From the NCBI GenBank assembly GCA_004431415.1, contig QPMI01000063.1:124001-188000 (forward strand): a DNA stretch of 64,000 nt. Direction: 5' to 3'. The stretch is from Cyanophora paradoxa CCMP329 (Eukaryota; Plantae; Glaucophyta). The stretch's first letter is position 1; each line of letters begins with the position of its first letter. The position numbers and the translations under genes were made by a program. The notes beneath the pieces are model-generated. The model did not search any database and had not been told where the DNA came from. It worked only from the letters and a program-made list of their open reading frames with translations. This document shows, one piece after another, positions 22,116 to 64,000 of this stretch.

Positions 22116-22165
<50 letters not shown>

Positions 22166-36169: not shown

Positions 36170-36436
36170 CGCCGCCGGCCCCGATGACAACTTTTTTTCG
36201 GAGCCGGGTACAACTTCTGAAAAGCGAGCGGTTTGAAGAGCGGCCCGGTCTGCGCCGACGATATTCCCTCGCACGCAGACGCGCCGCCGACTGAACCAAC
36301 CGCACAGACCGCTCCCGCAGCGCGGAGCCGACCAGTTGGCTCTCTCGGCAACGAGACGCGCGCGCCCTGCATGCGCGCCTCCGCGGCGGCGCCGAATGCG
36401 ATTTCGAGCTCGCGAAGTCTCGTGCCGCACGCGGCC

Positions 36437-39400: not shown

Positions 39401-39574
39401 CCGCGGGGCTCGCGCTGCGCCAGGCGAACCCCTTCGGCTCCTTCATCGCCGGCTAGCGCCCGCTTTGGCTCCTTTGGCTCAGCCCCTTACCTTAGTAAGC
39501 TTCCCCCCCGCCCCGCCCCGTCCCCACCGCCCTTTCCCACCTCCATTCGCGTGATACGCCTAGTACTAGTCTAG
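36437..39574 (+). CDS. DYRK-family (DYRK1/Yak1-like) dual-specificity protein kinase; start and C-terminal end approximate
   Basis: LGSGSFGQVYK, VALKIIK, FVFELLSQSLYSLL, IIHCDIKPEN, ADWGSAC..FAYIQSRFYRAPE, AIDMWSLGC, PLFDGRNEFEQI..IVEVLGMP, EALRHPFL. N-terminal KLTAGLLSTFRAISYAY resembles the DYRK1/Yak1 pre-kinase helix. Confidence 0.92.
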
Positions 39575-40016
39575 AACCACTTCGCCGAAAGCTTCGATTC
39601 GGATTTTGAATTGGGGTACCCGGCGGCGGCTCACTGTATATGCAACATGTACAGTACTAGTTGTTGGGCGCGCGCAAGGGCCGCGGCCGTGGCCCCGGCC
39701 GGATCCGGAGGCATGCATATGTACGAAATGTACATGCATGCATATGCAGCTGCGCATGCAGAATGATGCATTGTACATGTCATGCACACGATTCACGTGC
39801 ACATGATTAACAGTGCCTCCGTCTCGTGGCGCCCTTTTCCCCCACGTGCACCCACGTTCAACCCGCCGACGTCGACTCGTATTTAAGCCTCGGGCTTCGC
39901 CGGAACCCCCCCGATCGGTTCCGCAGCTTCGACGGGACCCCCCGGGGGTCACAATCAGCGCGCTGCCCGAAGGGACCGCAGGGGCCGACGTCCACGCGGC
40001 CCAGCGGGCCGGCCCG

Positions 40017-44219: not shown

Positions 44220-44879
44220 CCCGCGCCTTCTTCTGCTTCTTCCCCCCTCGCTTCTTCCCCCCTCTCGCGCTTCCCCCTGGTTGCGCGGCGCCCAGCCTCG
44301 CCGCGCGATGGCGCAGCTCCGGCTTGCTGGTTCGGTCACAGCAAATGAACCGGGCGGCCCGCCGCTGCCCCTGGCGCTGTTCGCCGGAGGGGGCACTCAT
44401 TCGGAGCTGGCTCGACGAAGGCAGCCCGGGTGCGCGCAGCGCGGCGCGAATCCCCCGAAGCTCCGCTAAAATTGAATGGCTGCACAGTCGGCGCGCCCCG
44501 CATCCCCAGGCTGGCTGGCTCGCGGGCGCGGGCTGCGCGCGCGGCGATCCTGGAGGCAGCGCGATCATCGCGTTCGCTCCTAGCGTTGGCGCGATCATCG
44601 CGTTCGCTCCGAGCGTCGGCGGCGTCTTCAGCAACCAGCGCGCGCAAGCAAGCGCCCGATCGGCAGCTTCCCGCGCATCGCCCGCGGCCGCCGACTTGAA
44701 CCGCGGGCGGCGGCGCTCCCGGCCAGGCCCCAGCCACCCATCCATCAGCTTCGAAGCCGGCAGCGGCTTCCGCTGCGCACGATCGGCCAGCCCGCGCTGC
44801 GCGCTCGGCCCGGCCGCCGCGCTTGACCCGTGTAGAGGGCAGCGAGCGGCGATCCGCCCGGTTGCGGGCGGGGCGCTGC

Positions 44880-47800
44880 AGGCGAGCCGAAGAGTTCTCC
44901 TGTTCGGAGACCGAGTCAGAGCGCCCAGCGCCCCGCCCGTCTCACCCAGGTGCGCCCCAGCACCCTTCGTACACTGAACCCCCCTCGAGCCCCCGCGCCG
45001 CCGCCCCGCGCGCAGGGGCGAGGGCGGGTCGGGGGACTGCCTCTGCAGCTTCGCCGCGCGGCGGGCGGCCCGGGGTATCACTCTCGCCGAGTTCCTCGAG
45101 TCGAAGCGCTCCGAGTTCCGAATGGTCGCCTCCCTCGCGAACCGGGTTCGATTCCCCCCCGGCCCGTTCCGTCTCCCCGGTCCGGTTCGACTCCGGCCGC
45201 AGGCGGACTTCCGCGTGCTGGGGCGGGAGTACCCCGCCCTGCTCCGCTCCGTCGAGGCGTACCTCCTCGTATCCCTCCTCCAGCTCCGCACCGCCGCCGA
45301 CCTCGCGGTGCACCCGTACCCCCCCACCCGTGACCCGGCGCCCTCCTCGCATCATCATCTGATCCGGTACCCCCGGCCCGTCGCAGCCCCCGGGCCCGAG
45401 CTCGCGCGCGTCGCTCCGCGCGATCGAGGCCGAGCGGCACTTCTTCGAGATGCAGCTCTGCAACGCGCGTACCCCCCGCCCTTGCGGTCGTACCCCTCTA
45501 ACTTCCCTTTCGCGTTCAGGTCCGCGACCGGCGGGAGGCGGAGGTGGACGAGCTCATGCGCCTCGTAGAGGTGGGGCTGTACCCCCCCCCGGCGAGTCTT
45601 CCCCCGTTCTGAATCGGGGTACCCAGGCGGGGGAGGCGGAGGGGGACGCGGCGCTTGCGGCGCTCGCGGCCGACGCGATGGCCCTCGCCGCGCCCGTCGC
45701 CGGTTCGGATCCCCGCGGGGCCTCTTTCATCTGAGCGTCGCCCCGCGCCCACGGTCCGCAGGGGACCCGCGGGAGGAGCCGGTGCCGCAGCGGCTGCGGG
45801 CGCGCCTGAGGGACCCCACCGTCCGCTTCTGGCGGCGCAAGGGGCCCGCCGCCGCGCCCGGCATTCCCATCCTCTTCCCGGTCCGTCCGCCCCCTCCCGG
45901 GGCGGAGCGGCATCTCTTTCTTACGCTCCTTACGCCCCGCGCATGCGCAGGGCGAGGAGCCGACCCCGCCGCCGCCCGCCGCCGACGCCGAGGCGGGCCC
46001 CTCCGCCCCGGCGACTGCGGCTGCGCGGGAGGCGGAGGGGGCGCCCCTGCGGGGGGTGCCGGAGCTGGTGGAGGCGAAGCGCACCGAGCTCCAGCGCCTC
46101 GCCGCCCTCCTCGAGGGTCCGCCCCAGCCCGCCCGCCCCGCCCCCTCTAGGGCCGCGCCAGGGCCCTCTGGAGCGCATTCGCGCTTAGCGTAGAGCGGCC
46201 CGCCCCGCCCTCCTCGCCTGACGGCCGGCTGGCTGCGGGGCGCAGGGATGCGGGCGGGGGCGGGCCCCGAGGAGTACGACGCGGCGCTGCGGGGCGCCGA
46301 GGCCTACGCGGCCGTCTCCCTCCTCCAGGCCCGCCCCGCGCCTGATCCCCACTTCCCTCTCTCCCGCCGATTGTGAGGCCGCCCCGTCCCCGCGCAGATC
46401 GACGCCGTCGCCGAGGCCGTGGTACCCCCCCCCCCACCTTCCCCCCACCATCTCGACCCCCTGCCTCACGAGCCAACGCAGGCGGAGCGGCTGGGGCCGG
46501 GCCACGGGTGGGCGGGGCGCCTGCGCGGCCTCCGCGCCGCCTTCGCCGAGCACCGCGACGCCCTCCTCGTGCGCCGTACCCCCCGGCGGCCCGGGGGCCC
46601 CGTCCCCGCCGACCGCAAAGGCAATCTAGAGCCGCCGGCCCTCCCCACCCTCCGCTCCTACCCCCCTCTCTACTCCCCACCCCCCTCCCAGGAGCCGCTG
46701 CAGGCATTTTAGGCTAGACCTGGGGCCCCGCCTCTGTAGAAGGCCCCTCCCCAAGCCTCTTCCGACGCGGGCTGGGGGCCCTCCGCAGGGGCGCGAGGCC
46801 AGCGAGCGCGCCGACGTCGAGGTGCCGCACCCGTCCCCATGCACCGCCGCCCCCGCCCGACTCCGCCCTCCCCGCCCCCGCCGCAGGGTCTGATCGAGCA
46901 GGCGGAGTTCGAGGACGAGGAGTACGAGGACGAGCCGGCCCTCTGCTCCCTGGCGCACCGGCGGGGCATCCTCGGGCGGCCTCTGGCCGAGGACCCCAGG
47001 CGCGCAGTCCCGCCCCGGCCAGAGCAAAGCCGAGCCGCGCAGAGCTCGGCCCGGCTGAGCGGATGGGCCGGCAGGGAGGAGCCGGTGCCGGGGGCGATCG
47101 GGGCGCTGCTGCACGCGTGCACGGCGCGCTTCTGGGCCGGCGAGGCCCCCGCTGTCGGGCCCGAGCTCCTCGCCGCCCTCGAGGCCCGCCCCCGCCCTTG
47201 CTCTCCGCTTACTCTTTTGCTTATTCTTCGCCGCAGGCGATGCGGACGGCGGACGGGGGCGCCCCCGAGGACCCCGGCTGGCACGAGGAGGAGCCGGTGC
47301 CGCACCCCCCAGCGTTCAGAGGCCCGCACCCCTCTGACGGGGCGGCAGGCGTGCCCGGTGGAGGCGAAGAAGCGGCGGGAGGCGCGGAAGGCGGAGGTCG
47401 GGCGGGTCGCGGCGCTGGTCGAGGCGGAGGGCGCCGGGCCCCCCGAGTGCGAGCGCGTCGAGGTCCGCCCCGGCCCGCCCCGGCTCGAACCCCCCCGGGT
47501 CCCTTTCTTCATCCTGAACCCTCCCCTCGGGCAGCTCCTGCGGGGGGCGGAGGCGTACGTCGCGGTCTTCCGCATGCAGCGCCGCCCGGTGCGTTGTACC
47601 CCTCTTCCAAAGAACCCCTTGCGCTCCGCTCGGGCCGACGGCCCGCGGCGGCAGGCACGGGGGCAGGCGAGCCCAGCGGGGGGGGAGGAGGCGGAGGCTC
47701 TCCTGGCCCGGGTACACGAGCTGAAGGAGGCCGCCGACCAGAGCCTGGAGGTGCCGCACTGTACCCCTGCACCGCCGCCACGCCACCGCCCGACTCCGCG

Positions 47801-48028
47801 CCCCGCGCCCCGCCGCAGGTGCTGATCGAGCAGGCCGAGTTCGAGGACGAGGAGTACGAGGATGAGCCGGCCGTCTGCTCCCTCGCGTACAGGCGCCGCG
47901 CGCTGCGGGACCCGCTGCGCGCCGACCCGCGCGACGAGTCGCTGCCCGGGCGGCTCCGGTCTGTGCTCCTGCCCTCCACCCTCCGCTTCTGGCTGCGCGA
48001 GAGCGCCCCGGTGGGCCCCCGGCAGTGA
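44880..48028 (+). CDS. Hypothetical protein built from three diverged tandem repeat units; start not resolved
   Basis: Recurring motifs: LLRSVEAYLLVSLLQ / ALRGAEAYAAVSLLQ / LLRGAEAYVAVFRMQ; LIEQAEFEDEEYEDEPA.CSLA.RR (twice, near-identical, ~46890 and ~47820); EEPVP..TVRFW / EEPVP..TARFW / DESLP..TLRFW. Confidence 0.7.
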
Positions 48029-48890
48029 CTGCTGGATTCTCGTCTTTGCTGAAGGGCTCCGGGGCATGCAGAGGGCGACTGGGGGTCGCACCAAAGCGGA
48101 CCCCCCATCGCCAGCGCCGGCGCCGGCCGCGGCGCCCGCCCCGCGGCGGCGGTCCGAAGCGGGGGCGGCGGGTGCCGGCGCCGGCTCCGCCCGGAGGCGG
48201 GAGCCGGGCCTGAGCATCTGAACTTGAGATCCACGAATACTAGGCTCAGATTCAGACGAGCCGCAAATTTTGGTTCGCTATATGCAATTGGTAGGGCTTG
48301 CGATTCAGGGCCAATCATTGAATGGTCACGAATTTAACGTAAACGTAGCTAAAGTTTTCGAATCAGGCTTCAAAGAAATTCTCGATCAACTAACTATCTA
48401 GCTATCTGGCTCTCGAATCGGGCAGGCCACGAAGCAGGGGATATGGCGCGCATGGTTGCCGGGGGCAGAGGCAGAGGGCCTGGGGGTGGGGGCCCACTCG
48501 GGGGAGGGCGCGCGGGGTGCATGTACATGCGGTGCAATAAAAATTAAATTAATGGTGCACGTGGCTCACTCGCCGACGAATTACGCCCACGAGCACCTTG
48601 TGCATGTCCCGCCTCAGTGAGTATCGCATAGATCGTGTGTACAGTGTACTGTATTCTACCCGAAAGCGAAAGGCGAAAAGCTAACAACGTTTTAACAAGC
48701 GAAAAGCGTGATCTAATATTAATATTAAATGTCACCTTAAGCTTGTTTGAAAATCTAATTACTTGTTTTTGAAAATCTACTTAAGGCGCCTTGGATAATA
48801 TCTAATCATTGAATTCTGATTTATTTCCGGAGCCATGTGCACATGCATGGATCCGACGTCGACCGTCGGACGCCGCGGCCAGGACTGCAA

Positions 48891-51800
48891 TCAAGCGCGT
48901 CCCGCGGCCGCGAACAAAAGAGCGAGCGTCGCTGCAAGAAGAGCGAGCACACTCTGGGGCCCGGGGCCAGCAGAACGCGTCGCTGCTGATGAAGGCCAGT
49001 ACGGCACGCCAGCGCTGCCGGCGCCGACATTGGCGTTCGTGGTGGTCACAGGGAGCGTCGACATCAGCGAGAACTGTTGAAAGCCACACGCTCATAATCA
49101 GAAGGTAATTCCGATGGCCAAGCCCGCGAGCTGGGTCATCAGTTTCGCACCGGCGTGAGGTGGTTGCAGGTGGCGGTGTAGGCGCCGGCGGAGGCGGTGG
49201 CGGCGGAGCAGACCTCCCAGGCCTTGCTGGAGGCGTTGAAGAAGACGAGCGAGACCGCCTGGCCCGCCGCGATCGTCACGCCGCTGGCGACGGGGATCGT
49301 GAAGCCGACCCCCGAGCCGAACTCGCTGCTCAGCTGCTTCGCCCTGCCGGCGTCGTCGAGGCCCGTCGCCGTGACGTCCAGGATCGGCGCGACGAGGCGG
49401 TAGCCCGCCGGCGGCGCGGGGAAGGACGACGCGTTCGAATACACGCGCACAAGGGCCTGTTCGGGTTTCGGAGGTAAGGGGCCCGAACAAAGGAACGGGG
49501 ATATCAATGCGCACCTGGAAGTTCTTGCCACCCCAAGCGTTGGTGGGGAAGGTGATCTGTCGGGTAGAATGTATACGTAAGCACACGGAGCGCGAGCTTG
49601 AAGCAAAAGAATCAAGCACCGCCGCCCCCGGAGCGTCGGAAATGCCGCCGACAGTGACCCTAGAGCCGGCCGAGGGGCACGCCTGCTCACGAATCCGTGA
49701 GTCGAGGTACGATGGTAAAAGACTGGCGAATGCCGCGGACCTTGAAGCCCCAGGGGTCGAACTCGGTGGCGCGCGTCGCCTGCGTGTCGCACGGCGTGTC
49801 GGGGCTGCTCAGCGAGATCTGAGTTCTGAAGGTCAGCCCCCGCACGATTCCGACGGCCCCGAGCCTAATGCGCGGCACCTGGGCGGCCACTTGGGTGAGG
49901 GCGGTCTGCGTCTCGGCGCGGATGGAAGCGGCGGCCGTCGAGGTGGCGGGGATCGCGGAGAGCAGACCCGAGAGGCTCGTCTGCAGGCTCTGCGCGGCAC
50001 CTCGCGCTCAGCCGACATTCGGTCTCCAAATTGAGGACACCGATATCGATATCCCTCACCTTCGCATCGATTCCTGCAGTCGTTGCGAGATTCTGCGAAT
50101 TCTATCATCAGAGCCCTGGAAACACAATCGATATCAATACCGCGGTAGGAGCTTTCGCACGGGGTTGGCCTTGATGACGTTCATGAGCAGGGTGGCGCCC
50201 TGAACCGCCGTGGCTTCCGAGACCGCGCCAGTCTTGGCGGCGACGGGCGCGACTGACGAGAAGAACGTGACCAGGGCTCCCGCGTTCTGCGGCCGAGGAC
50301 GGAGCACAAAAATCGCGCCCTCGCATCAAAACGCGCGCGGTGGCAAGAATTCGAGGAACGTAATTAAATAATATAACGCCGATGCTGCGTACCGCGGTGT
50401 TGGTGAGATCGACTCCCGACTTGGTTGCCTCCGTCGTCACAGCCTGTAATTTGTGGAATTTAATTGTTTCATCGGCGACCGGCAAGTTACTTCGATTCCC
50501 GTATATATATAAAAACTCGAGGCAGCCCGCACGGTCATGACGTTGGAGACGACGGCCGAGAATGACGCGAGGAGGCTGTCGATCGCGCCGAGCGCCGCGC
50601 GGCGAAGGCGGCGGAGCTGGACGCCGGTCGCCTTGCTGTAGCGGTCCTTGAGGGTGCCGACGAGCGCCAGGATCTTGTTCATCTTCGTCGCGAAGTCGTC
50701 GCCGCTCTGCGCTCGCCGGACGCGGAAGCAATTCAGCAGACGGGGTGCGATCAAACGGTCGTGTTTTTAAAATTGAAGCAGGTCCAAGGGCGCACGTTCA
50801 GGATCGCCGTGACTTCTTTGTTGACGGCGTCCACTGCCGCCTGTGGAGAGCAGTGGGGTGTAAGGTATATTATCGATGCAAGAAACGCCGCGGCCGGCAT
50901 GCGCAGCGCCCACGGACGTTGAAATCGGCGACGACGTTGCCGGTGTTGGGGACGAGCGCCTTGACCTCGACCGCTGCGGCGATCGCGAAGGCCGTCGTGC
51001 GCCCCGCGCCGTCCTCCACCGCCACGCTCAGCTTCGCCGTCCGCGTCGCCCCGCTCTGCGCACGCGCAAGATTTGCGATTCAAGTCAGCTCAGCGGCTCA
51101 TTGTCACAGAGCGGATATCCTTCACATCCGGGGCGCGCACGTCGGGGAAGAAGAAGACGATGGTCTCCGTGAGGACGTCGACAGCCAGGGGCGAGCTGGA
51201 ACCCTCGGACGTCACGGTGTACTTGAGGGGCCTCGAGGCCGACTGCCACCCCGAGCACGTCACCTGCAATCGCAAGCACGCGGGTGAGTGCGCGAGTGGA
51301 CCGCGCCCCGGCCCGAGTCTGCAGCATCGCGCACCGTAACCTTCTCCACGCCCGCCTGGACCGAGAGAGGGGACACAGTGCAGCTGCCACCGGACGGGGC
51401 CGCCCCCTCGCCTGACCGCAGGTGACTCGATGATGAGAAAATATATAATTAGAAAAGGTCAAATAATTACTCACTGGTGGCCACGGGTGTAGGAGTTGCA
51501 ACTGTCGTCCTGCATTACCACGCAAATTAGATATATAGCAAGACTTCGAATCATACAGAAACGGGTGTGCGGTGCTTGCGCGCACTCCGCCATTACCACC
51601 GGTGGCGAAGGGGTCTGCGTGCGCAAAGACATGCAGTGAGCCTCTCACAGTCGGTCACAAGCTTAAGATTAAGGCAATTCCGACTACCGGAGAGGCCGTG
51701 GGAGTCGGGCTCGCCGTTGGCGACGGGCTGGCAGTCGGGCTAGGACTAGGGGTCGGCCTGGCAAGCGAGTCCGGAGTGAAAATCGGAAATGAAACGGAAA

Positions 51801-53290
51801 TGGAACGGTCGATTACAGAAAGACACGCACGAAGGAGTCGGGGACGGGCTTGGCGTCGGGACGCAGTTAACTGCGGGCAAGAGGCACGGCCAGCTTATTC
51901 TTTTTCAAGTTACGAAGTGACGAACTATATCCCCCGTCAAGTCGAACCTGAGCCTTGGGCTTTGAAGCCCGGAAGGTTCGCCGTTGAAAAATCGGACTGG
52001 AAAACAAGGAACAGCTTGGCAGAAGAGTCCGTCACAGTGTATGGTTGCAACTGGGGGTTGTTGTCGACCGTAATGTTGCCGCCTCCAAGGCCTGAGAGTG
52101 GAGTAAGGCTGGTCAGCGTGTTCGTTCCCGTCGCCGCATAGATCTATTTTGAGATGTCAGGACACAGAATATTAACGTCAGGCTTTCAAAATCACAAGCA
52201 CGCGCGTATACAGTATCGAACGGGATGGAGCCACTCTCAACCGGCTCGAACATCAGATCCGAGAAGGACAGCGACACCGTGCTCGAACCCATGCAAGGAG
52301 CTTCAGGGAGTTCGAACAACCTTCGGGCCGGCGAGACATGCGATCAATTAATTAATATATTGCAACGTTCAACGTTACCAGGGGGCATAGATTGACTGCG
52401 TACCAGAGGCCGAAACTCGAATCCGCGTACGGCCCGAAGTTGATGGAGGACGACGCTTGATATTTGGCAGACGTAAAAGCTCTCACGCCGTTGCGAGCGT
52501 TGTATCCGTCGCTGTCGACGATATTCGGATCCAGAGGCGGAGCGCCCGTTGGGGTCGCTGTTGCGGCGGTCATCAATATATATATCAACTCAGCGTTGGT
52601 TGATCGACACCCGACGACTCACTTCCGGTCTTGGCGACGCTCCAATATCGGGCGCTGAAGCTGATCTCTACTTCCGTCTGGGAGTGGTAGCACCAAACGA
52701 AGACCCTCGACGAGGCCGACGTGACGATCGAGCCCGTTCGAAGGCTGCTTCCAATAGCCAGCAACGCAGTCGCAGAAGACCCGACGTCCACGATCTGCCG
52801 GAAGAATCTAGCTATTCATACACGGTGCGTACTACAGGCCTATAGCTAGGCCTAGGCCCAGAATGAATACACGTGGCGCACCCGCAGGCCGGTCCCATTG
52901 TATATGAAATATTGAACATTGTCTGTCCGGAATTGCTGCGCCACGATCTCGAACCTAATGACCTGGTCTTGCGGTGCCGAGATGGTCCTGCGCGTCGCAT
53001 GTGTGATTAACTTTGCGCCGCAGTGCTATCAATGTTCGCGCGTACCAAGCTAGAGACTCGTTGGACACGTAAGAGGTTGTAATAGAATTGCCATTGACTT
53101 CGACAACAGTGTACGGCGTGTAGGTCACGTTCAGGAAGGCGGGCACCGAAGTTGCCGTTAGCGCATCGGTGGTCTTCGTCGTCGCACCGCTCACCCGTGC
53201 GCCTTCGCCGTTCACAATCGGAGCCGCGCAGGCAGCAACGATCAAGCCCAGCAGCAGGGCTTCGCAGCCGCGTTCTCGCCGGAACAACAT
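48891..53290 (-). CDS. Surface protein paralog A: signal peptide, CUB-like pair, Pro/Ser linker, REJ-type module, GAIN/GPS, GPI-like signal
   Basis: Signal MLFRRERGCEALLLGLIVAACAAPIVNG. CUB VSLSFSDLMFE..FDTV..KLFLVFQSDFSTANLPGFKA. REJ APSGGSCTVSP..VTCSGWQSASRPLKY..VAVEDGAG. GPS AWEVCS..YTATCNHLTP/FSLM. Tail VPYWPSSAATRSAGPGPQSVLALLAATLALLFAAAGRA*. Confidence 0.8.
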
Positions 53291-53438
53291 CGCGGCCGAG
53301 GTAAAGAACTCCCGCAGGGCCGCAGGGCCGGCAGTCGGCGCACGTGGCAGAGCTCGAGTGATCGGTCTCTCCCGCATGCGCAGGCGGCACTGCCGCGGCA
53401 GGCCAAAGAACAACATCGCGGCCGAGGTAGAGATCTAC

Positions 53439-53693
53439 TACCGTAATGCAGAATATTAAGGTCTGTACTTTATTATGTCGTCCCGAAATTATGTCGCCTA
53501 AAACTTGACAAAACGACATAATTTGGGGACGTCATGATGGGGCGCGCAATGAAGTATCCCCCCACTTTTACCGCCCCATACAAGCCTGAAAAGTTCATGC
53601 CGACATAATTTGGGGACGTCATATTTCGCATAGAGAAGGCTCGGGTTTTAAAACGACATAAATTTGCATGACATAATATTGTGTATTACGGTA
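53439..53693. mobile_element. ~255-bp MITE with TA target duplication
   Basis: TACCGTAATGCAGAATATTA versus TAATATTGTGTATTACGGTA (imperfect TIR); subterminal CGACATAAT repeats. Shares TTACCGCCCCATACAAGCCT with the 13575 element in the opposite orientation. Confidence 0.85.
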
Positions 53694-54499
53694 CTAGCCT
53701 AGTACTAGCTATAGGCTAGTACTACAACTGTACTAGCCTACTAGGCTAGTAGGCTAGAAGTCTAGAACTCCCGCTGCTGACTCAGTGCTGAGTCCCGCAG
53801 GGCCGGCGCTCAGCGGCTGGCAGCCTGGCAGTGGCTGGCAGAGCCTCAGGGCCTGGCACAGTGGCACTAGGATGCCACTAGCCTGGCAGTCCGACGGCGG
53901 CTCCGACTCCAAGCCTCCGACGTCGACTCGCCGACATCGCCGTCGACTCGGCGTCGAGTCGGCGACTCGGCGTCCGCCGTCCGGTCGACCGGACGTCCGA
54001 CGGTCGAGTCGCCGTCGAGGCTGATCCCGTCCGATCATGCCATGATGATCATGAGCCTCGGAGGACGGTCGACTCCGGGTCGAGACCGTCGAGCCTCCGA
54101 TCGCGAGGCTCGGAGTCGCCGACTCGGCGAGTCGCCGGTACATATATATCGGTTGATGAATCGGGTAGCTAGCTATATATAGTACAGCTGAATTGTACCG
54201 GTACTGCCCTGGTCCGGTAGTACTACGGTACCACAGTACCTACCGGTATACAGCTGAATTGATTTTTTTTGGTGAATTACCTGCAGCTGCATGTATATAT
54301 ATTGCTATATATGTGTATATATATGCGCAAATAATGTTTGCACATACGCGCATATATACGCGAAAAGGAGTTCAAGCTGTGAGCCTGTGACTCAGCTGCA
54401 GTCGTCCATTAATATTGCTTTGCCGATCCCGGATCCGCAACCTCGATTCAGTTTAGACACTTCGCCAGCTTCGAGTCTCCCCTCTAGATCTACCGGTAC

Positions 54500-55029
54500 T
54501 AGGGCTGCGCACAGTCCACCTCAACCCCCACCCGGTCGGTGGGCCCGCTGACTGTTACCCGCCGGTGGCGGTCGGTGGAGGGGGGTACTTGCTGCAGTGC
54601 GTGAAAATTGACAGGAAATTCGCTTAATTCTGCACAGCTTCAAGGCGCTACGCGCCTACTCTGTTCCCAACTGCCGAAAGCAAGTGCTTTGGGGCGAGTT
54701 CAAGCCAGTTGTGGGGAAGCTGGGGGGTTGATGCCCAGGAGGGGGGTACGGGATAACGCGATCGATGGCGTCAGCTCCCTTGGGCTCCGTCGGATTGAAG
54801 AGCGCAGGAGCGCAGGAGAGCAGGAAGATGAACTAAGCAGGACTTTCCTGGCCTGGGTGCACGGAATATGTAACTTTCGCGCGCGAGAATATGAAATGTT
54901 CGCATGCCTACCCCCCCCAGAATTTTTATTTGTATGGTACCGGGCGTTGTATGGCGGTGGGCCAGACTTTCCACCCGGTCGGTCGGTGGGAGGCCGCCAC
55001 TGCCACCGGCCGCCACCGGCCCAGCCCTA
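54500..55029. mobile_element. hAT-type MITE (530 bp) with a perfect 8-bp TSD
   Basis: Termini TAGGGCTG...CAGCCCTA flanked by ACCGGTAC at 54492-54499 and 55030-55037. Subterminal CCACC/GGTGG repeats. Confidence 0.88.
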
Positions 55030-55379
55030 ACCGGTACTGGTCCGGTAGTGGTGTCCTTTGTTTTGCCCCTCCTAGTAGGCTCCTACTGTTCTGCCGCCTC
55101 CGCCTCCTGTGACAACGTCTTCTAGTTCTGCTGTTAGCTCCATCTCGTCGTCGTCGTCTAGATCTGCTGGTGCTGTTGCCTCGTCTCTTGTCCCTGTATG
55201 TGCTATTGCTAGTGCGAGTAGTATTGTCGTGTCTTCGAACTCTAGATCTGGATCTTCAAGGCTTTGACTGTAGTTCCTCGTACTCGTTCTCCTTATTTTC
55301 TGCGCACCCGTGCTCCCCGTCGTTCCGAAGTTCTCCTCGTGCTCGTTCTCCTTATCCTTTGCGTTCTTATGATCGTGCC

Positions 55380-55510
55380 CCTTCTCGTGATCCCTCTTGA
55401 TTGTATGTTTTGTGATAGTTTGCAACTGCTGTATCTTTAATTTGTGATTACTTTGTTATCCTTAATATCACTACGTATACCTACGGGGGGTTCGCCCCAC
55501 CGCGGGTTTT
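55380..55510 (-). repeat. Dispersed repeat copy 2 (see 15140-15275)
   Basis: ATCCTTAATATCACTAC..CTACGGGGGGTTCGCCCC. The minus strand reads GGGGCGAACCCC (hairpin) then CCGTAG. Confidence 0.65.
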
Positions 55511-56060
55511 CATGACGCCGTTAATTTGGTTCACGGCGCTAATCAGCGAATTAATCTGTATCGCTGCTAGGCAGGGCCAGCGATTCGGGGTCAACGATCG
55601 AACATTTGACGTAGCGCTAGCTGAAGAAATTCGAATTCTCGACCGACTGACTGTCATGATCAATTGCAAGCTCACGACCATCACGAATCGGGCAGGGTAC
55701 CGGTACCATTGCGAGGTGCCGCATCCGGCCTAACTTCTGGCTAACGAACTTGCCGTTTTGCGCATCACATTGCAATTGAATCGACGTTAGCTGCACATTG
55801 CAATTGCAACATTGTAAAGCAAAACCGTTTATTCTCATGGCGCCGGCTAGCTGCGAAAAGCTAGGACGAAAGCGACGAAACACTGATCTAAGTGCACCTA
55901 AAAAAAGACTATATATAGCTAGCATGAGATCAATATATATTTATCGATATCGGATTATGCACATATGAATATTAATGCGAGTAGAGCAGCTGCAGAGCAT
56001 TGCTGCGGACATCAGAAGAATCAACGCGTACGCGTTCCGGATTCGAACGTATTAGCAGAA

Positions 56061-59000
56061 TCAACGCGCGCCGCGAAGTGCGACGAAAGCGGCCACAACT
56101 GCCCCCAGAACAGCCGCGACTACCGAAGGGACGAGCTGCACACTGGCCGACGGCCAGTACGGTACGTTCGCCGACAAAACCGTGCTGCCGCCGGCAATTA
56201 GCGTGAACTGCGGTGCACACGTCAGCGTTTCGACGACGGCACGCAGCTGGCAGCGCAAAGCGGCGCGCCGGCGTGAGGTGGTCGCATGTGGCGGTGTACT
56301 TGGCCGACCCGGGGGCGCTCGTCGCGGGACTGCACGTGGTCCACTTCTTCCCGGCCTCGTCGTAGAAGGCCAGGGAGACGCTCTGGCCGCCCCCGACCGA
56401 GAGCGTCGCCGGCATCTCGAAGCGGATCTTGTCGGGGAAGTCCTTGATGAAGACGGCCTTGCCGTCGCTGCCGAGCTTTGTCGCGGTGATGTCGTAGACG
56501 GCGGAGGCGACGCGGTTGTTGGCCGAGGGGCCAGGGAAGTCTCCGGCGTCCGGAGTGGAGACGGAGACCTGGAAATCGCTCGTCGACGCGCTGGCCGGGA
56601 ACACGAACTGCGGAATTCGAAGATGCGAATTATAGTTATGATTTCGAAATGGTGGGCGGGAACACAAGCCAGCGCACGGTAGCCGATCCCACGGTGACGG
56701 TGAGCGACGCCGCCGTCCCCGGGCAGACCTTGAAGCGGTACGGGTCGATGTCGGACGCGCGCTCCTGCACGCCGCACTTGGCGTTCGCGTCGCTCAGCGT
56801 GATCTGCTGCGCGTCAGGGGCGAGCTGCGCAGCAGCTTTGCAGCTGTGAGCACGGATACCTGAGTGGAAACGGTGGCGAGGGCGGCCTGGGTCTGGGTGC
56901 GGAGCGTGGCGGCGAGGGTGGACGTGGCCGGCAGGGCCGCGAGCATGCCGGCGAGGCTGGACTGGAGGGCCTGCAATTGGAGCCTTCAGGTGCTGGGGAT
57001 GGTAATTCGAAACGCACGCTTCAAACGCACCGCTGCATCCACTCCAGGCGTGCTTGCGAGAGTCTGGAGAAATAGACCTCGAGGTTCAGCTATCGTGCAC
57101 ACGCGAGCGCGTGCATTTGAATATTGTGCGAGCTCGAGAGCGTACCGGGTTCAGTTGAATGACTTCCATCAAGAGCGTGGTGCCCTTGATAGCATCCTCT
57201 TCCTGCGCAGAACTCAGCGCATTTCTATGTGCTGGTGTAATTCAAAATCTTTATTCGTTTGCAGACGCACCTTGAGAGCTCCTGTCTTGGACGCAATGGG
57301 CGCGACGGCGGCGAAGAAGGTAACAAGAGCGCCGGCGGTCTGCGCCATCGAGTAACGTTCATCGCGGTGGTAAGGGCGGTCGAAAATTTGGCAAGGATGT
57401 CCGCCTGCCGGAGGGAGCGGCGCATGCGCATCTGATGCCGATGCCGAAGTGTCGTGTTTGTGGCCTTGGAGTAGTACGTCTTGAGGGACTCGATGTTCGC
57501 CAGAATCTTCGCCATCTTCTCCGCAAACGGAATATTCGAGTCCTGCGAAATCGATTGATAATTATATAAGAAGAATTCGCTTTTGCTATAGCTAGTTCCG
57601 AAATACACTTACAGCGACGATAGCGGCCATCTGTTTGTCGAACTCCACAAGCATTTGCTGTGTGCACAGATTGGAGTAAATGATTAATATTGCTCTCTCA
57701 AATGCACGCGCATCCGCGCACGTCAAATTGGGCGACGGGGCTGGCGTTGGTATCGACGAGCGGGTTGACTGTGATTTGACCGTCGATGGCATACTGAGTG
57801 GAGAGCTTGTCGCGGCTGGCGTCCGTCACAGTGACCGTGAGCGTCGTCGTGATGGGGCCGTTAGCAGTGGCGCCCTGGCCATGGTACCGGTGAACTTCGA
57901 TCAGGTGGAGGCCGAAAGGGCCTGGAGGCAGCTCTAGCTACCGCGGGGAAGAAGAAGTCGAAGGTTTCGTTGAGAGAGTTGCGTGCGAGAGGCGCGTTGA
58001 AGCCCTTGGCGCTGAGCGAAAAGCTGAGGGGCAGAGTGCTCCCAACCCAGCCGGAGCATGAGACCTGCACCAGGTCGGATATCAGTACCAGTCGAGATAG
58101 TTATAGTGCGATTGCAAGGGTAGCCGCAGCGCTTGCTGCGCGCATACGACTGACCGTCACTTTGTCGACAACGGCCTTGACGGTTGCCGGACTCGCGGTG
58201 CACGTCCCCCCGGATGGCGGCGCGCCTGTATTCGAATATTAATATTTAGTTATGGGGCTCGGCGAATGTGCCCTAACTAGCTATAGAGCGGCCGTGCGCA
58301 CCGGCGGCGACAGGAACAGGAGCGGGAGTTGGGACGGGCGGTGCTTCCACGGCGGCCGCCGGCGCCGGCGTCGGGGTGGCCACGGTTGCAGGGAGCTCGA
58401 CTGCGGTTTCCGCGGCGGGCGTGGGCGACGGGCTAGCGCTGGGCGTCGCGGAGGGCGACGGGCTCGGGCTCGGGCTCGGAGACGGCGTTGGAGTCGGCGT
58501 AGCGCAGGAAACTGCCGCCCGTGTGAGGCGCGGAAATATATTTGAAGGAAGCTGAAAGGCAGCGAAGGTGCGCACGTGACACGCTCGCCTCGATTCCATC
58601 GCCGTTGTTCCCTCCGTTGTACAGCGCGAACATCGCCACCTCCGTGTGGTTCGGGCTGGTCGTCAAGGTCGGAATGCTGACGGGCATGACGCCGTAGCCT
58701 TTCGGAATGCCAAGGGGAGAAGAAGATTGCGAGCCATCCAGTTGAGTCATCTGCAGCAAAATGTTGATGGCAATTCATCGAGACACTCCGATAGCGCTGG
58801 CCTTGCATGCTTACCGAGAGCCAGTCACACATGTTCGGCGCGCAATTTTCGACAGAGAACTTGGGGAAGGAAATTGCGAGCGAAGGAACGCCGTGGGCAG
58901 AGACGCAGCTGGCAATTGCATCGCTTGCAGCCTTCAGATACCTGTTATATATATGGTTCGATTGCGATTTGCGCATCCGCTTAGTTTCTAAAGATATAGA

Positions 59001-62000
59001 GAGCCTCACAGCAGCCGAATGGATGTGCTGGAGCTTGTCATGCTGGGAATCGCGATCGACTGCACCGAAGTGCGGACTGGCTGGGTGGCGAGGTTCTGGA
59101 TGGTGAAGCCGCTGACGGTTGCCGCGGGCGACAGGAAGGTCGTGTTGACTGCAAAGAGCTTGAATCATACAGCTTGCGTACGGATCCGGACTTTAGCTAG
59201 GAGAATTGAGCCACGTACACGTGCTCTTTTGTTGCGCTCTTATGTTTATGCTGAATGTGTAGTTGCTGCCGGCGGTGTAAAGGAATACAGAGCTCGAATT
59301 TGCGGTAAACCAGGCCGTCGATCCTGAAGTGCGAGCGGCAAGGAGCACAGGCGGCTGCACGCCGACGTCGAAGACCTGTGCATGCGGTCCCACCCCACAC
59401 GAACTTTAATATTCGGCAACTGCTTTCCTACCGCGCCGCGGCACTCGCACGCACCCATAGTCTTCCCAAACTCGAAGTGAGGAGTCTCTCGGCATTAATC
59501 TCGACAAAGTCATCCTCACCAGGCGCCTTGACCAGCCTGCGTTCAATGTTGTTGAGACGCGTGGCTCACGGACAGCAGTTCGCTATCTTGCACGTGCATG
59601 TGCATATATATACATGCACGTGACTCACCAGCCGGCCTTCTCGTTTTCCGGATAGGGGAGATTACCACCCATAGCGAATTCTATTGGTGTTGAAACGTTT
59701 CGTGTCGCAGTGAAGACGCCTTTGTCGCATATGACTGGGATTGACCATGATCGCATTTAGGATACCGTTGAGCATAATTACAATTATATAGTCTGGTTTC
59801 AATATCCCGCTCACCTCGGACATCGGCCACAAAAGCGCCAGCCGGCTCCACTTTGTAAGCATCGACGTCGTAGGACCGTGAGCCCTGATTATTGAACATC
59901 GATCGTGTCAGTCATGGTCGGACGCTTCGGAACAATGCAAAACAATTGCGTGTGCGTGCCTGGTAAAATCCGTCCGAGTGGAATACAACGAGCAGCTCGG
60001 CTCCCGGAGTTGGCATGGCCGCAAGGGGGGGGTAGGTCGTGGTGCCCCATCCAAGTCCCGATCGGGGATAGCTCGGATGGGAGGGCAGCTGCCTGGTAGA
60101 AGTTGGCGTGACCTCAAAAACCTACACGTGCACTCGCGATGTCAGGAATCGTATCGGCGCATTATAATAACCGTCCTCCACGCACAAACATGGCGTCGCA
60201 GAAGCAGAGTTCGCCATCGAGTTCGAGCCAGCGGAGGGAGAGAGTGGAGCGGGCTCCGCATCCAGACTCGGTCAACCTAGACACATTTGGCATCTTTGCG
60301 TACCTGAAAGACCACAATGAGATCAACTCGAATTGGGAAGAACAAATATACATAGCCGAACGAGCTCGCGCGATCGGGAATGTCATCGGTCGCACCAAGC
60401 TCCCATGAAGTCGCCAGAGTAATTTTTGATTCCTATTTCGGCGGGTGCTCCGATGTCTGGGTGTAAAGTACCAGATGTAAAGTTCCGAGTTTCCCGGGTT
60501 GAGGTCAGAGTCGCGGGGCTTGACGGCGTCACTGCGCACAAAATTGAAATCGAGCCATTTTTATATATTTAATTAGCTATAGCCTGGCGTGAGATCTCAT
60601 GATCAGACGCACCACTTGTCTTTGCCTTCGAACTGTACTCGGCGGTAAAATATAGCTCCGCGTTGACGTAGTTCCTCGCTTCTAACGCAGCAGAGTGGAA
60701 GTCGTCGCCGGGGTACCAGGCGAAAAGGAACAACCGGCTCGACTCGCTTGTGTACGTGGTCCCCACGACCACCGAGTCCGCGAGGAGCCTCGGCGGATTG
60801 ACGCCGTAGTCGATCAACTGTCATCGGTATCGGAAATATGAATATTAACTCATACACGACGTCCATATCTTCAGCGACTTGCATGCGTGTGCACCTTTAG
60901 GGAGTTCGCGGTCGGCTCGGAGGCGTTGAACTTGACCGATGTGAACGTGATTTGAACGCTTTCCGAGTCCGACGGGGCGTAGAAGTTCCTGAGGGGCTCG
61001 CGGCGTTAGCTGTGATGATTAATTTTTACAGAGAGGGCTGATATAAGTGGTTCGGGGACACGCCAGCCGGCCACTTCGTTGAAAGGCCCGCCGTTGTGCA
61101 CTCCCTTGATTGTCTGTGTCGTTGATGTCGCTGCCACCGCCCCCGGAAGAGTCCCGCACACCGCTGCGCGCGTTTTAATTTAGGACGAAAAGAAATCCAG
61201 AGCAAAAACTGATCGTGAGTGCGTGCTCTCACCCGAAACACTTGCGCGGAAAGCGCCGCCCGGCACCGGGTCCGCCGCATCGGCAGTTCCCTTACTGCCT
61301 TGATTCTGGTGGTTGGAGTGGAAGATGGCGACAAGCTCGGCCCCAGGTGTCGCGGTGAATGCAGGGAAATTTACGGCTGACAATCTGAGCAGCAAATAAT
61401 GAAATCATAAAAAGATTTAAGAATTAAAACCTTCGTGTCAAGCAAATTTAAAGTGAGCGCACGTAGGCTTGCCCCAGCCAACCCCAGATTTCGGGTAAGG
61501 GGTCTCGTGTGCGACAAAGCGAACGGAGCTGCTCGTAATCTCGAAAACCTAACGACAACGCGGGTCAAGCGATGCCGAAGGCGCAGATTTTGAAACGGTA
61601 GCCGACGGTCAAGAAGCACTGGTAGATCAAGTACACGCACATACATCACATCGAACCATCCGCTTGCCTGGCCATCGATCTCGAGCCACGTGTGTTTCAA
61701 GCTGCAGCTCGAGTCCTCCGCAGGCAGCGAGACGCGCCTGAAAAACATTTATAGCTTATGTGCGCGATCAAAAACGTTTTGCAATTGAAACTTGTGCACC
61801 ACGCGTGCATCTGGTAGGCGGTGTAGGGTTTCAGCGCGATGTCAACAGGTCCTCCTGGGAACGGGCTGAGAGATAACGAGTTGAATATCCGAGTCTGCCC
61901 CGAACTCGAACTCAGGGTCGCGGCGTCGGACGCAGTCGCTGCGTGCGCGCGACGCATGCGGCTCATGATCAGCGACACGAAAAGTGGGGGTTTTTAGAGT

Positions 62001-64000
62001 CCTGATCGCGGAGGGTGTGTGCGTACACCCGCTCTTGGCGATGGACTTGTATTCCGCCACGAAATCGTATGTTTTTCCACTCAAAACGTCCCAAATGAAA
62101 AGAAGGACTTTGTTAGAAGCGGACGTATACGTAGTCCCAACGACCGGCGGAGCCGCAAGAAGCCTCGGGGGGGAGACGCCAACGTCGAGCAGCTGCGAAT
62201 AGGTTTCGCAGGCTTACACATTCGCTCTTATCGCAGTTGCGCGCCACGCATGCGCAATTGCAAGCATGCGTACCTTCAGAGAGCTGTCCGTGACAGCAGC
62301 GCCTCGAATCCACTGACCGTTGAGCTTGAACTGGACGACGTCCTGCTCTGTGGGAGCGGTGATGTACCTGCACGAGCAATGTAAGGGTTACATTTGCATG
62401 CAAGAAACGAAGATAGAAAACTTGAGGTGCGAACCAGGCGGTCAAGGCGTCGTACTGACCCATCTCGAAAGTCACAGCCAACGTTTTGGTCGTCGCCGCA
62501 GCACTCAGCGTAGACGGATCGGGCGCCAGTCCCGAAGGGCATTTCGCTGTGTTCGAGAAAAGCATGCAAAGTTTACGATTAGCTGCGACGAAACCGTGCG
62601 GCCTACAGCTGCGAGTCGAAAGGCCTAATTTATAAGGCAGTCAATGTCGCACTGAAAGCGTTTGCGCTGAAGCCTCCACCAGGGGTCTGATTGTCGCCTC
62701 CAGTGCTGCCCTGGTAGCTCGGATTCGAGACAAACACGACAACGAACTCGGCTCCTTCCGCAGCGTCGACGATGGGGAATGCGCTTGTGGTGATGGTGGG
62801 CTTGCCCCACCCCACGCCAGAGAGCGGATACGCCGCCGAGCCGCCGACGATTTTCGTTGATGTGGCAGTAATCTCGAAGACCTGCATAAGGGCGGGTAAA
62901 TCGAGCAGTCGAACACGCGCATATGCGTGCACGTGCACGTGTGTGCTTGCACGTCATGATCACATGCGAATTTGAACGCACATACATCACATCGTACCAC
63001 CAGCTATCTTCACCGTCAATCTCAGTCCAGCGCCAACTGAGACTGCAGCCAGAGCTTGAAAGCTGGCTCGATCGTTTGACAGTCCTACGCAAAATACTAT
63101 CACAACGAGTTGCAGGCAGTGGTACGTATACCGATGTCGCACCAGGCCTGCAAGTGGCTTGCCGGGTACGGCTTGATCTTGACCTCTTCGTAGATCAAGT
63201 CGGGGCGCAGCTCCACCGAGGCAGAAGCGAACGTTTTGGTGTCCTTCGCTCCAAGAGTAGCATCTGGCGAGGCCGTCGCTGCGCGATTCGGAATGCGCTC
63301 GTTAAATGCATTGGCGTTCACGTATGATGATGAGCTCGAGCTTACATCCGCTCTTTGCGATTGATTTGTACTCGGCCGTGAAATCGAGCTTTCCCGTATC
63401 CCCACGCGCGGCATAGCCTGCATTGTTGTCGCCGTGCTTGTGCAAGAACACGAAGAGCCTGTTCGAGGCCGTTGTGTATGTTGTCCCGACGACCGGCGGG
63501 GCCGCGAGGAGCCTCGGGGGGGAGACGCCGATGTCGAGAAGCTGCTCGAGCGGATCGGGATTGTGCATGTACAGAGATTGCGCCTGCGGCGGGCTACCTT
63601 GATGGCATTGTCATTGACGGTCGTTCCGTCGATGGCGGTCCCAGTGACCTTGAACTGGATCACGTCCTGCTCAGTGGGAGCGGTGACGTACCTGATGCGA
63701 ATTTGCATGAGCGTTAAATATTTGAGGCAAACTTCAATCTAGTGCTCGGATGCTAGTTAGCTTGAGTGATTGCGATTGCGCGCGAGCACCAGCCCATGAT
63801 CTGCACAGCAAAACAAAAGTCAAAAAAATGTCTAAAATACACAAACATTACATATATAAAAAGCGGCCGTCTCGCCTCGTCGTTGTAGTTGGCCTCGTAG
63901 AAGGCGGTCATGGTTTTGGTCGTTGAAGTAGCATTCAGAGTGCTTGGTACGGCCGGAATCTGAGGGCACTTGGCTGCGCGAGTGCCGGCTCATAATCAGG
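56061..64000 (-). CDS. Surface protein paralog B (5' end at or beyond the window edge): multiple CUB-like pairs, Pro/Ser/Thr linker, REJ-type module, GAIN/GPS, GPI-like signal
   Basis: Repeated D(V/I/Y)GV.PPRLLA..VVGTTYT..S.RLF..F.AEY.S.AK (~60620-60815, ~62030-62190, ~63350-63545). Linker TPTPSPSPSPSPS (58300-58505). REJ PPSGGTCTASP..VQVSCSGWVGSTLPLSF. GPS KWTTCS..YTATCDHLTP/FTLI. Tail VPYWPSASVQLVPSVVAAVLGAVVAAFVALRGAR*. Confidence 0.8.

What the first reader, a model, noticed from the sequence alone, without database searches (positions are those of the whole stretch)
48891..64000. Tandem polycystin-1/adhesion-GPCR-like ectodomains (CUB-REJ-GAIN/GPS) ending in a GPI-like signal instead of a channel or 7-TM domain
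Seen: both paralogs have CUB-like repeats, a Pro/Ser stalk, the motif PxGG.C..SP..V.CSGW...PL.(Y/F), a helical region, and a beta region ending W..C......T.TC.HLTPF. The ORF stops ~50-60 aa later with a conserved VPYWPS(S/A) followed by a spacer and a hydrophobic tail. Established: PP.GG.C.V.P..F.I.C.GW.D..PL.Y is the REJ-module signature of PKD1/REJ proteins. HL|T/S is the GPS autoproteolysis site of GAIN domains, which normally sits just before the 7-TM (adhesion GPCR) or 11-TM (polycystin-1) region. Small residues plus a spacer plus a hydrophobic C-terminus is the GPI-attachment pattern. Inference: these are self-cleaving, GPI-tethered GAIN receptors with no signalling domain. They could be sheddable or force-released surface coats, or ectodomains acting in trans on a separate channel, in a non-animal lineage.
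Basis: partly seen in the sequence, partly recalled or inferred. Interest (0 to 1): 0.8.

Follow-up and report, generated by a model that had tools for sequence, protein, structure and literature searches.

The report
Algal REJ-GAIN surface proteins without channel
The alga Cyanophora paradoxa has two neighbouring genes for surface proteins that carry the self-cutting outer module of the human kidney protein polycystin-1. They end in one short greasy anchor instead of a channel or receptor body, a layout I found in no paper, though this scan had already met the family elsewhere in the genome.

Summary
On the minus strand lie two paralogous, intron-rich genes of Cyanophora paradoxa, on public contig tig00000246.

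- **Gene A** (53290-48891) is intact: 24 exons, 901 aa, all introns GT-AG.
- **Its layout** is a signal peptide, two beta-rich modules, a Pro/Ser/Thr stalk, a REJ-type sandwich, a GAIN domain with H-L-T, a VPYWP linker, and 18 uncharged residues followed by "RA" and the stop.
- **REJ** passes Pfam's threshold on gene A's annotated product.
- **Pfam GPS** does not hit gene A. It does hit distant family members.
- **No multi-TM domain follows.** No TM-like segment lies downstream on that strand, and the next gene converges.
- **GPI anchor or short one-pass helix cannot be decided.** Cleavage and expression are untested, and no RNA contig covered gene A.
- **"CUB-like" is unproven.**
- **Gene B** (>64000-56061) has at least four module pairs but looks damaged in this assembly.

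The family was found only in Cyanophora. This scan already noted it on other DNA of the genome (s1-511157, s1-589913). It is a new variant of a known kind.

The parts
48891..53290 (-). Gene A, complete: 24 exons, 901 codons plus stop. It corresponds to public model tig00000246_g21518.t1, which is truncated at both ends.
   Evidence: Exon-by-exon translation with phases; all introns are GT-AG, 58-106 nt. Exons are collinear with the paralogue model P0002. P0021 maps here.
53225..53290 (-). Predicted signal peptide of gene A: Met, a basic n-region, a hydrophobic core and an A-x-A site.
   Evidence: By inspection of exon 1. No predictor was run.
51948..53224 (-). Two beta-rich N-terminal modules of gene A. 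Module X is exons 1-3 and module Y is exons 4-6. They are 'CUB-like' by pattern only.
   Evidence: Exons. X-type exons recur four times in gene B. Exon 6 lies nearest to CUB clusters by language-model features, score 0.92, which is weak. No Pfam or PDB hit.
51475..51870 (-). Pro/Ser/Thr-rich stalk of gene A (four short exons).
50918..51411 (-). REJ-type module of gene A (exons h, i, j). It carries the signature PSGG.C..SP ... VTCSGW...PLKY and is modelled as an Ig/PKD-like beta-sandwich.
49879..50840 (-). GAIN subdomain A of gene A (exons k to n): seven predicted helices.
49151..49818 (-). GAIN subdomain B of gene A (exons n2, n2b, n3, o). It ends in W..C...YTATC-N-H-L-T-P, with the H-L-T codons at 49162-49154.
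48891..49073 (-). Last exon of gene A. It holds the final GAIN strand (the tethered-peptide position), a linker, VPYWP (49007-48993), small residues S-S-A-A, a Gly/Pro spacer, 18 uncharged residues (48953-48900), R-A and the stop (48893-48891).
   Evidence: The same spliced ending is found in P0002, P0019, P0003, P0005-P0010 and P0022.
56061..58225 (-). Gene B, C-terminal half (REJ motif to stop): 12 exons, 41% identical to the gene A subfamily. Public model g21519.t1 (P0001) covers only the part after the frameshift.
57340..57356 (-). Gene B defect: a 17-nt GT..AG remnant sits where gene A has intron, 17-codon exon and intron (246 nt). Left unspliced, it shifts the frame.
   Evidence: The alignment shows that the missing segment is conserved in 9 family members.
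56208..56268 (-). Last intron of gene B, 61 nt, with a GC (not GT) donor directly after C-D-H-L-T-P. The H-L-T codons are at 56280-56272.
56061..56207 (-). Last exon of gene B: final strand, VPYWP (56165-56151), S-A-S, 20 uncharged residues (56135-56076), RGAR and the stop.
58276..64000 (-). Gene B N-terminal region: at least four X-type and three Y-type modules, then a Pro/Ser/Thr stalk (about 58660-58290). It runs off the window end, so the start is not in the window. Its exons were not curated one by one.

Best explanation
Gene A encodes a 901-aa secreted, membrane-tethered glycoprotein, and gene B encodes a longer paralogue.

**Order of parts:** signal peptide; beta-rich modules (one X-Y pair in A, at least four X and three Y modules in B); a mucin-like Pro/Ser/Thr stalk; one REJ-type Ig-like sandwich with the polycystin/REJ signature; a complete GAIN domain (helical subdomain A plus beta-sandwich subdomain B) with H-L-T in the turn before its last strand; a 25-40-residue linker with a conserved VPYWP; and one short C-terminal hydrophobic segment followed by 2-4 residues. 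There is no channel, 7-TM, PLAT or cytosolic domain.

**Most likely mechanism (inferred).** In the ER the GAIN domain cuts itself between L and T. The large outer fragment stays bound non-covalently to a stub of about 58 (A) or 46 (B) residues. That stub consists of the last GAIN strand, the linker and the anchor. Pulling on the outer fragment, or binding to it, can then release it. The protein would act as a sheddable adhesion or coat molecule, or as a mechanical fuse. Any signal would have to pass through a separate partner.

**Anchor.** It is either a GPI lipid or a short single-pass helix, and I cannot separate the two.

**Shown versus inferred.** The gene structure, the REJ match, the GAIN fold and the absence of a downstream TM bundle are shown. 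Cleavage, anchoring, location and expression are inferred.

Gene A looks functional. Gene B is probably disabled in this assembly.
For: - **Gene model.** 24 exons with consistent phases and GT-AG introns. The junctions are identical to an independent paralogue model.
- **Organism and annotation.** EukProt Cyanophora paradoxa tig00000246_g21518 and g21519.
- **REJ.** 27.4 bits against a gathering cut-off of 25 on gene A's product P0021. Paralogues score 34.1, 38.9 and 28.0.
- **GAIN.** The AF2 model of P0002:38-538 has pLDDT 77.4 overall and 85-92 in subdomain B. The top Foldseek hits are all GAIN crystal structures, E 3e-7 to 1e-4.
- **GPS by sequence.** Pfam GPS scores 24.2 against a cut-off of 22.5 in family member P0010. 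That member matches the GAIN-B exon profile at E 4e-15. A family profile weakly hits the GPS regions of ADGRF1, ADGRB2 and ADGRL3.
- **Catalytic motif.** H-L-T is conserved, and W, C, C and L are invariant.
- **No TM bundle.** No hydrophobic 19-mer occurs in any minus-strand frame within 4.9 kb after A's stop or 2.6 kb after B's stop. No Pfam domain is found there. A + strand spliced RNA contig at 47900-48234 shows a convergent neighbour.
- **A complete annotated relative.** P0022 (g21522), next door on the same contig, has a signal peptide, an ectodomain and the same kind of tail.
Against: - No RNA contig covers gene A in the one RNA-type run laid, and 17 RNA-type runs hold next to none of its words. 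Expression and splicing are therefore unconfirmed.
- The public annotation of gene A itself does not splice the last intron; it ends in HLTPVRN and a stop.
- Pfam GPS does not hit gene A, gene B or their closest paralogues.
- Only two of the four canonical GPS cysteines are present, and Pro follows the Thr. Cleavage may therefore fail.
- The fold was predicted for an 89%-identical paralogue with a shallow 15-sequence alignment, not for gene A's joined model.
- Gene B has a frameshifting 17-nt remnant and a GC donor.
Confidence: 0.7

Rival explanations
1. Same ectodomain, but the C-terminal segment is a genuine single-pass transmembrane helix with a 2-4-residue cytosolic end, not a GPI signal. 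The proteins would then be minimal members of the one-pass REJ-GAIN family of this genome that have lost the cytosolic tail.
For: - All eight tail-less family members end with an Arg or Lys within the last 2-5 residues, the positive-inside pattern.
- Uncharged stretches are 16-20 residues, and gene B's is 20.
- Family member P0009 has a 25-residue TM followed by a 60-aa cytosolic tail.
- Earlier scan notes describe giant one-pass REJ-GPS relatives. I did not check these.
Against: - The stretches are short and only moderately hydrophobic (Kyte-Doolittle mean 2.1-2.7 over 17 residues).
- They are preceded by small residues (S-S-A-A, S-A-S, G-x-S-A) and, in gene A, by a Gly/Pro-rich spacer of about 9 residues. 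This is the classic GPI pattern.
- The tail exon is the least conserved part of the protein, 38 of 60 residues against at least 90% elsewhere. That suits a signal which is removed.
Confidence: 0.45
2. The GAIN domain is a structural, non-cleaving module, as in some animal adhesion GPCRs. The protein would be a single-chain surface or matrix glycoprotein with no shedding mechanism.
For: - No Pfam GPS hit in genes A or B.
- One GPS disulfide and one of the two Trp residues are missing.
- Pro sits at the position after Thr in both genes.
- From my own knowledge: several animal GAIN domains with an intact H-L-T/S are not cleaved.
Against: - H-L-T is conserved in all 12 family members that reach the site, across about 40% sequence identity. 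That argues for selection on the triad.
- The motif sits in the correct turn of a confident model.
Confidence: 0.35
3. The locus is a decaying, unexpressed gene cluster. The genes would be pseudogenes or silent copies of a recently expanded family.
For: - No RNA support.
- Gene B has a frameshifting 17-nt remnant and a non-GT donor.
- Near-identical copies on other contigs (84-93% identity) suggest recent duplication.
- The public annotation breaks both genes.
Against: - Gene A has 24 exons with no stop or frameshift, canonical splice sites and an intact signal peptide and tail.
- The frames of all other gene B exons are open.
- Gene B's frameshift could be a one-base assembly error.
Confidence: 0.15
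4. Transcripts splice past the annotated stops into a multi-TM channel or 7-TM domain. The genes would then be ordinary PKD1-like or adhesion-GPCR-like genes, misread.
For: None found. In animals a GAIN domain normally sits directly before a TM bundle (PMC3321182; PMC12716839).
Against: - No TM-like 19-mer in any minus-strand frame downstream.
- No Pfam domain there.
- A convergent expressed + strand gene 0.5 kb after A's stop.
- Ten independent family gene models end the same way.
Confidence: 0.03

Closest known systems
Polycystin-1 / PKD1-like / sea-urchin REJ proteins (REJ module followed by GAIN/GPS)
   Same: REJ signature motif and a Pfam REJ match, followed directly by a GAIN domain with H-L-T close to the membrane. 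From my own knowledge: sea-urchin suREJ1 also has only one TM segment and a short tail.
   Different: - Only the last ~130 of the 452 REJ profile positions are present, forming one sandwich.
- No PLAT domain, 11-TM region or channel domain.
- No C-type lectin, EGF or PKD-repeat array.
- The end is a 16-20-residue hydrophobic stretch plus 2-4 residues.
- The lineage is a glaucophyte alga.
Adhesion-GPCR GAIN domains (BAI3 4DLO, BAI2 8OEK, latrophilin 4DLQ, CELSR1 8VY2, CD97)
   Same: They are the best structural matches, covering both subdomains. H-L-T lies in the turn before the last strand, and the last strand is hydrophobic like the tethered agonist.
   Different: - 9-14% sequence identity.
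- One GPS disulfide instead of two.
- No 7-TM domain for a tethered agonist to act on in cis.
- No HormR domain.
Single-TM isoforms of adhesion GPCRs (Drosophila Cirl-1TM, GPR126 isoforms; bioRxiv 10.1101/2023.01.11.521585)
   Same: A GAIN-bearing ectodomain held by a single anchor without a 7-TM unit. This isoform is reported to work by binding a 7-TM partner (abstract).
   Different: Those are splice isoforms of genes that also make the 7-TM form. Here the tail-less form is the whole gene and the whole family, and no partner is known.
Other REJ-GAIN/GPS genes of Cyanophora noted by this scan (giant one-pass forms with FN3 tails; s1-511157 'tail-less' paralogue; s1-589913, this same cluster)
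   Same: Same genome and the same REJ-GAIN-anchor core. s1-511157 describes the same tail type.
   Different: Those notes are unchecked by me, except that a third cluster member (P0022, g21522) exists. The giant forms are said to carry a long FN3 array beyond the TM, which is absent here.

Membership tests
REJ domain (Pfam PF02010) | Match to the REJ profile at or above the gathering score (25 bits) | tested here: met
   Gene A's annotated product P0021 scores 27.4 bits, E 1.7e-6. Only profile positions 311-442 of 452 are matched. Gene B, tested exon-wise only, scores 10.4 bits at the same profile positions.
REJ domain (Pfam PF02010) | Full-length REJ module (several hundred residues, multiple sandwiches) | tested here: not met
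   Only about 130 residues, one Ig/PKD-like sandwich, lie between the stalk and the first GAIN helix.
GPS motif (Pfam PF01825) | Match to the GPS profile at or above the gathering score (22.5 bits) | tested here: not met
   No hit at E <= 0.1 in P0021, P0002 or P0019 (gene A and its close paralogues), or in the exons of A and B. Met only in the distant family member P0010 (24.2 bits). P0011 scores 20.0.
GAIN domain | Fold: helical subdomain A plus beta-sandwich subdomain B, with the GPS strands integrated | tested here: met
   [not shown]
GAIN domain | Catalytic H-L-(T/S/C) in the turn between the last two strands | tested here: met
   N-H-L-T-P in A and D-H-L-T-P in B. The motif lies between strands 435-440 and 446-451 of the model.
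GAIN domain | Autoproteolysis actually occurs | not testable with these tools
   This needs a protein experiment.
Polycystin-1 family / adhesion GPCR | An 11-TM region with PLAT and channel domains, or a 7-TM domain, directly after the GAIN domain | tested here: not met
   The stop comes 48-60 codons after H-L-T. No TM-like segment or Pfam domain lies downstream, and the neighbouring gene converges.
GPI-anchored protein | N-terminal signal peptide plus a C-terminal signal: small residues at the attachment site and two positions after it, a polar spacer, and a hydrophobic end | tested here: inconclusive
   By inspection, gene A fits: S-S-A-A, a ~9-residue spacer, 18 uncharged residues, then RA. 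Gene B's spacer is short and hydrophobic. All tails end in a basic residue, which also fits a TM anchor. No GPI predictor was available.
GPI-anchored protein | GPI transamidase and biosynthesis genes present in the organism; lipid anchor shown chemically | not tested
   No reference sequence could be handed to the tools. The papers searched gave nothing on GPI in Cyanophora.
CUB domain (Pfam PF00431) | Match to the CUB profile; four conserved cysteines | tested here: not met
   Exon-wise Pfam gave no hit. A profile of four X-type exons gave no hit against PDB sequences. The cysteine pattern is absent. The only lead is that exon 6 of gene A lies nearest to CUB clusters by language-model features, score 0.92 with low recognition. 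The X-type exon gave nothing. Each module is split over three exons, so the whole-domain test needs the joined model, which I did not submit.

The most novel reading that the evidence does not exclude
These proteins would be one half of a 'split polycystin' system. A self-cleaved, lipid-anchored REJ-GAIN protein sheds its outer fragment under force. The exposed last strand, or the freed ectodomain, then gates a separately encoded PKD2/TRP-type channel in trans. If so, the REJ-GAIN sensor and the channel were separate partners before animals fused them.
Probability: 0.08. Interest if true: 0.85.

Novelty: new variant of a known kind. Interest (0 to 1): 0.55.

Why it matters
GAIN domains are known outside animals, in Dictyostelium and Tetrahymena (PMC3321182). 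The GAIN-7TM link is thought to have arisen in stem holozoans (PMC12716839). What the domain did before that link arose is open.

Here a REJ module and a GAIN domain occur together in a glaucophyte, the polycystin-1 arrangement, but tethered by a bare anchor with nothing to signal through. This suggests that the REJ-GAIN pair is older than, or independent of, the animal channel and receptor bodies. It also suggests that autoproteolytic shedding, not tethered-agonist signalling, may be the module's basic job.

It gives a small, intact gene (901 aa) on which cleavage and anchoring can be tested directly.

The practical value is also an annotation fix. The public models cut both genes into pieces and miss the signal peptide, the modules and the anchor.

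Tried and rejected
- **Pfam on 20 stop-free exon stretches.** Only two sub-threshold REJ hits, and no GPS or CUB.
- **RNA evidence.** The four runs that hold the stretch are DNA. One RNA-type run laid on 47900-53600 gave no contig over gene A, only a spliced + strand neighbour. Splicing therefore rests on paralogue models and splice-site logic.
- **Word search with a 212-aa stretch of gene B's N-terminal region.** It was meant to fetch an annotated model and found nothing.
- **Profile of four X-type exons against PDB sequences.** Nothing. The language-model look-alike search for an X-type exon also gave nothing.
- **Family profile against PDB sequences.** Only weak adhesion-GPCR GPS hits (E 0.04-1.4), plus spurious RecA concatemer hits.
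- **Big profile search.** The 3,000-4,000-aa bacterial and fungal hits (P0012, P0014, P0015) are low-complexity or repeat matches, not relatives.
- **Splice past the stop.** Rejected.
- Searches were made exon by exon by reference. Whole-domain tests used database proteins P0021 (gene A's annotated product) and P0002 (89%-identical paralogue).
- **Papers.** Searches for Cyanophora or glaucophyte with polycystin, REJ or GAIN, and for GPI-anchored GAIN proteins, found no description.


Full report
**What is there.** The window is GC-rich and intron-rich. The finding's motifs all lie on the minus strand. A translated comparison of 48.7-53.7 kb with 55.9-64 kb shows two paralogues that share about 500 C-terminal residues. 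I call them gene A (53290-48891) and gene B (beyond 64000 to 56061).

**Organism and annotation.** Exact look-ups name the organism and the locus. Gene A's C-terminal part is EukProt Cyanophora paradoxa tig00000246_g21518.t1 (P0021). Part of gene B is g21519.t1 (P0001). A third family member, g21522.t1 (P0022, 835 aa), lies on the same contig beyond the window.

**Gene models.** I read the minus strand in three frames and fixed the exons by coordinates.
- Gene A has 24 exons and 901 codons. All 23 introns are GT-AG and 58-106 nt long, with a local donor consensus GTGCG. Phases are consistent throughout.
- Each C-terminal exon maps, in order and without gaps, onto residues 39-538 of P0002. P0002 is an independent public model of a paralogue on contig tig00000767, and identity is 89%. 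This supports the junctions, including one 21-codon exon that I first missed.
- The public model of gene A is truncated. It starts inside the stalk, keeps one intron, and reads through the last donor to end in HLTPVRN and a stop.
H-L-T-P closes exon o at 49151, and F opens the last exon at 49073.

**Gene B.**
- It has the same C-terminal exons, with some introns gained or lost.
- It has at least four X-type and three Y-type N-terminal modules. Its start lies beyond the window.
- Where gene A has intron, 17-codon exon and intron (246 nt), gene B has 17 nt bounded by GT and AG (57356-57340). That is too short for the 56-121-nt introns seen here. Left in, it shifts the frame, and the annotators' model starts just after it.
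- The last intron has a GC donor (56268).
- Gene B is thus probably disabled, unless the assembly has a small error there.

**Family assignment.**
- Exon-wise Pfam gave only two weak REJ hits, at the same profile positions in both genes.
- A profile of the GAIN-B exons of A and B, searched against 1.84 billion representatives, found 11 proteins below E 1e-10. All are short Cyanophora gene models.
- On whole proteins, REJ passes Pfam's threshold in gene A's product (27.4 bits, cut-off 25). It also passes in three relatives.
- Only the last ~130 of the 452 REJ profile positions are matched. This is one REJ-type sandwich, not the long animal module.
- Pfam GPS passes only in the distant member P0010 (24.2 bits against 22.5). 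It gives no hit in genes A or B or their close paralogues.

**Structure.**
- An AlphaFold2 model of P0002:38-538, built with a 15-sequence family alignment, reached pLDDT 77.4 and pTM 0.67. It reached 85-92 in the C-terminal sandwich.
- Its parts are a beta-sandwich (residues 1-90), seven helices (97-286), a second sandwich (305-451) and a disordered tail with a terminal helix.
- The best Foldseek matches are GAIN crystal structures: BAI3, BAI2, latrophilin-1, CELSR1 and GPR110, with E 3e-7 to 1e-4.
- The related ZU5/FIIND folds score about 10.3.
- H-L-T lies in the turn between the last two strands. The last strand, the tethered-peptide position, is the start of the final exon.
- Across the family, one Trp, two Cys and the Leu are invariant. 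The first GPS Cys pair is absent, and Pro follows Thr in genes A and B.

**The end of the protein.**
- After H-L-T come 48 (B) or 60 (A) codons. They hold the last strand, a linker, VPYWP, small residues, 18-20 uncharged residues, RA or RGAR, and the stop.
- Eight other family models end in the same way. One (P0009) has a 25-residue TM and a 60-aa cytosolic tail.
- The rule-of-thumb GPI pattern is met well in gene A and less well in gene B.
- The ever-present basic residue at the very end, and the TM-bearing relative, fit a short stop-transfer helix equally well.
- The tail exon is the least conserved part of the protein. I leave the anchor type open, at roughly even odds.

**No hidden TM bundle.** No hydrophobic 19-mer occurs in any minus-strand frame from 44000 to 48890 or from 53440 to 56060. 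No Pfam domain is found there. An RNA-type contig with a + strand GT..AG intron at 48009-48071 shows that the next gene converges on gene A.

**N-terminal modules.** The repeats are real. 'CUB' is unproven: there is no Pfam hit exon by exon, no PDB profile hit, and no CUB cysteine pattern. One exon (gene A exon 6) lies nearest to CUB clusters by language-model features, at 0.92 with low recognition, which is only a lead. An X-type exon gave nothing. Each module spans three exons. The whole-domain test needs a joined model, and I did not submit one to any tool.

**Expression.** None was seen. The four holders of the stretch are DNA, and 17 RNA-type runs hold almost none of its words.

**Comparison and novelty.**
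- GAIN domains outside animals are known (PMC3321182).
- The GAIN-7TM module is placed in stem holozoans (PMC12716839).
- Single-TM isoforms of adhesion GPCRs exist in flies and mammals (bioRxiv 10.1101/2023.01.11.521585).
- I found no paper on REJ or GAIN proteins in Cyanophora or glaucophytes, or on a GPI-anchored GAIN protein.
- The scan itself had already noted this family on other DNA of this genome, and on this same cluster read in another window.
- My verdict is a real, lineage-restricted family. It is a new variant of the REJ-GAIN kind, with anchoring, cleavage and expression still to be shown.

Noticed in passing
window 47900-48426, + strand: An RNA-type contig shows a spliced + strand gene with a 61-nt GT..AG intron (48009-48071). 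It converges on gene A's 3' end. Its GC-rich ORFs (77% GC) gave no Pfam hit.
   Followed up: partly
window 53439-53600: DNA contig depth jumps from about 6-8 to 114-263, with many loose ends. A high-copy repeat therefore lies directly upstream of gene A. A ~22-nt stretch including the start codon occurs twice (near 53428 and 53302), giving an in-frame upstream ATG at 53416.
   Followed up: partly
window 16000-24000 and 32000-48000: Very GC-rich blocks (70-80% GC) with strong GC skew of opposite sign. They contrast with 52-62% GC over the two genes studied.
   Followed up: no
[not shown]
   Followed up: no
beyond the window end, same contig (P0022 = tig00000246_g21522.t1): A third family member with a complete annotated model: a signal peptide, a different ~370-aa N-terminal domain with no Pfam hit, GAIN, C-D-H-L-T-A-F, VPYWPG, and a hydrophobic end plus RRMW.
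   Followed up: partly
other contigs (P0002 and P0020 on tig00000767; P0019 on tig00021339): Three copies 84-93% identical to gene A, two of them on one contig. They are either a recent expansion or uncollapsed haplotypes.
   Followed up: no
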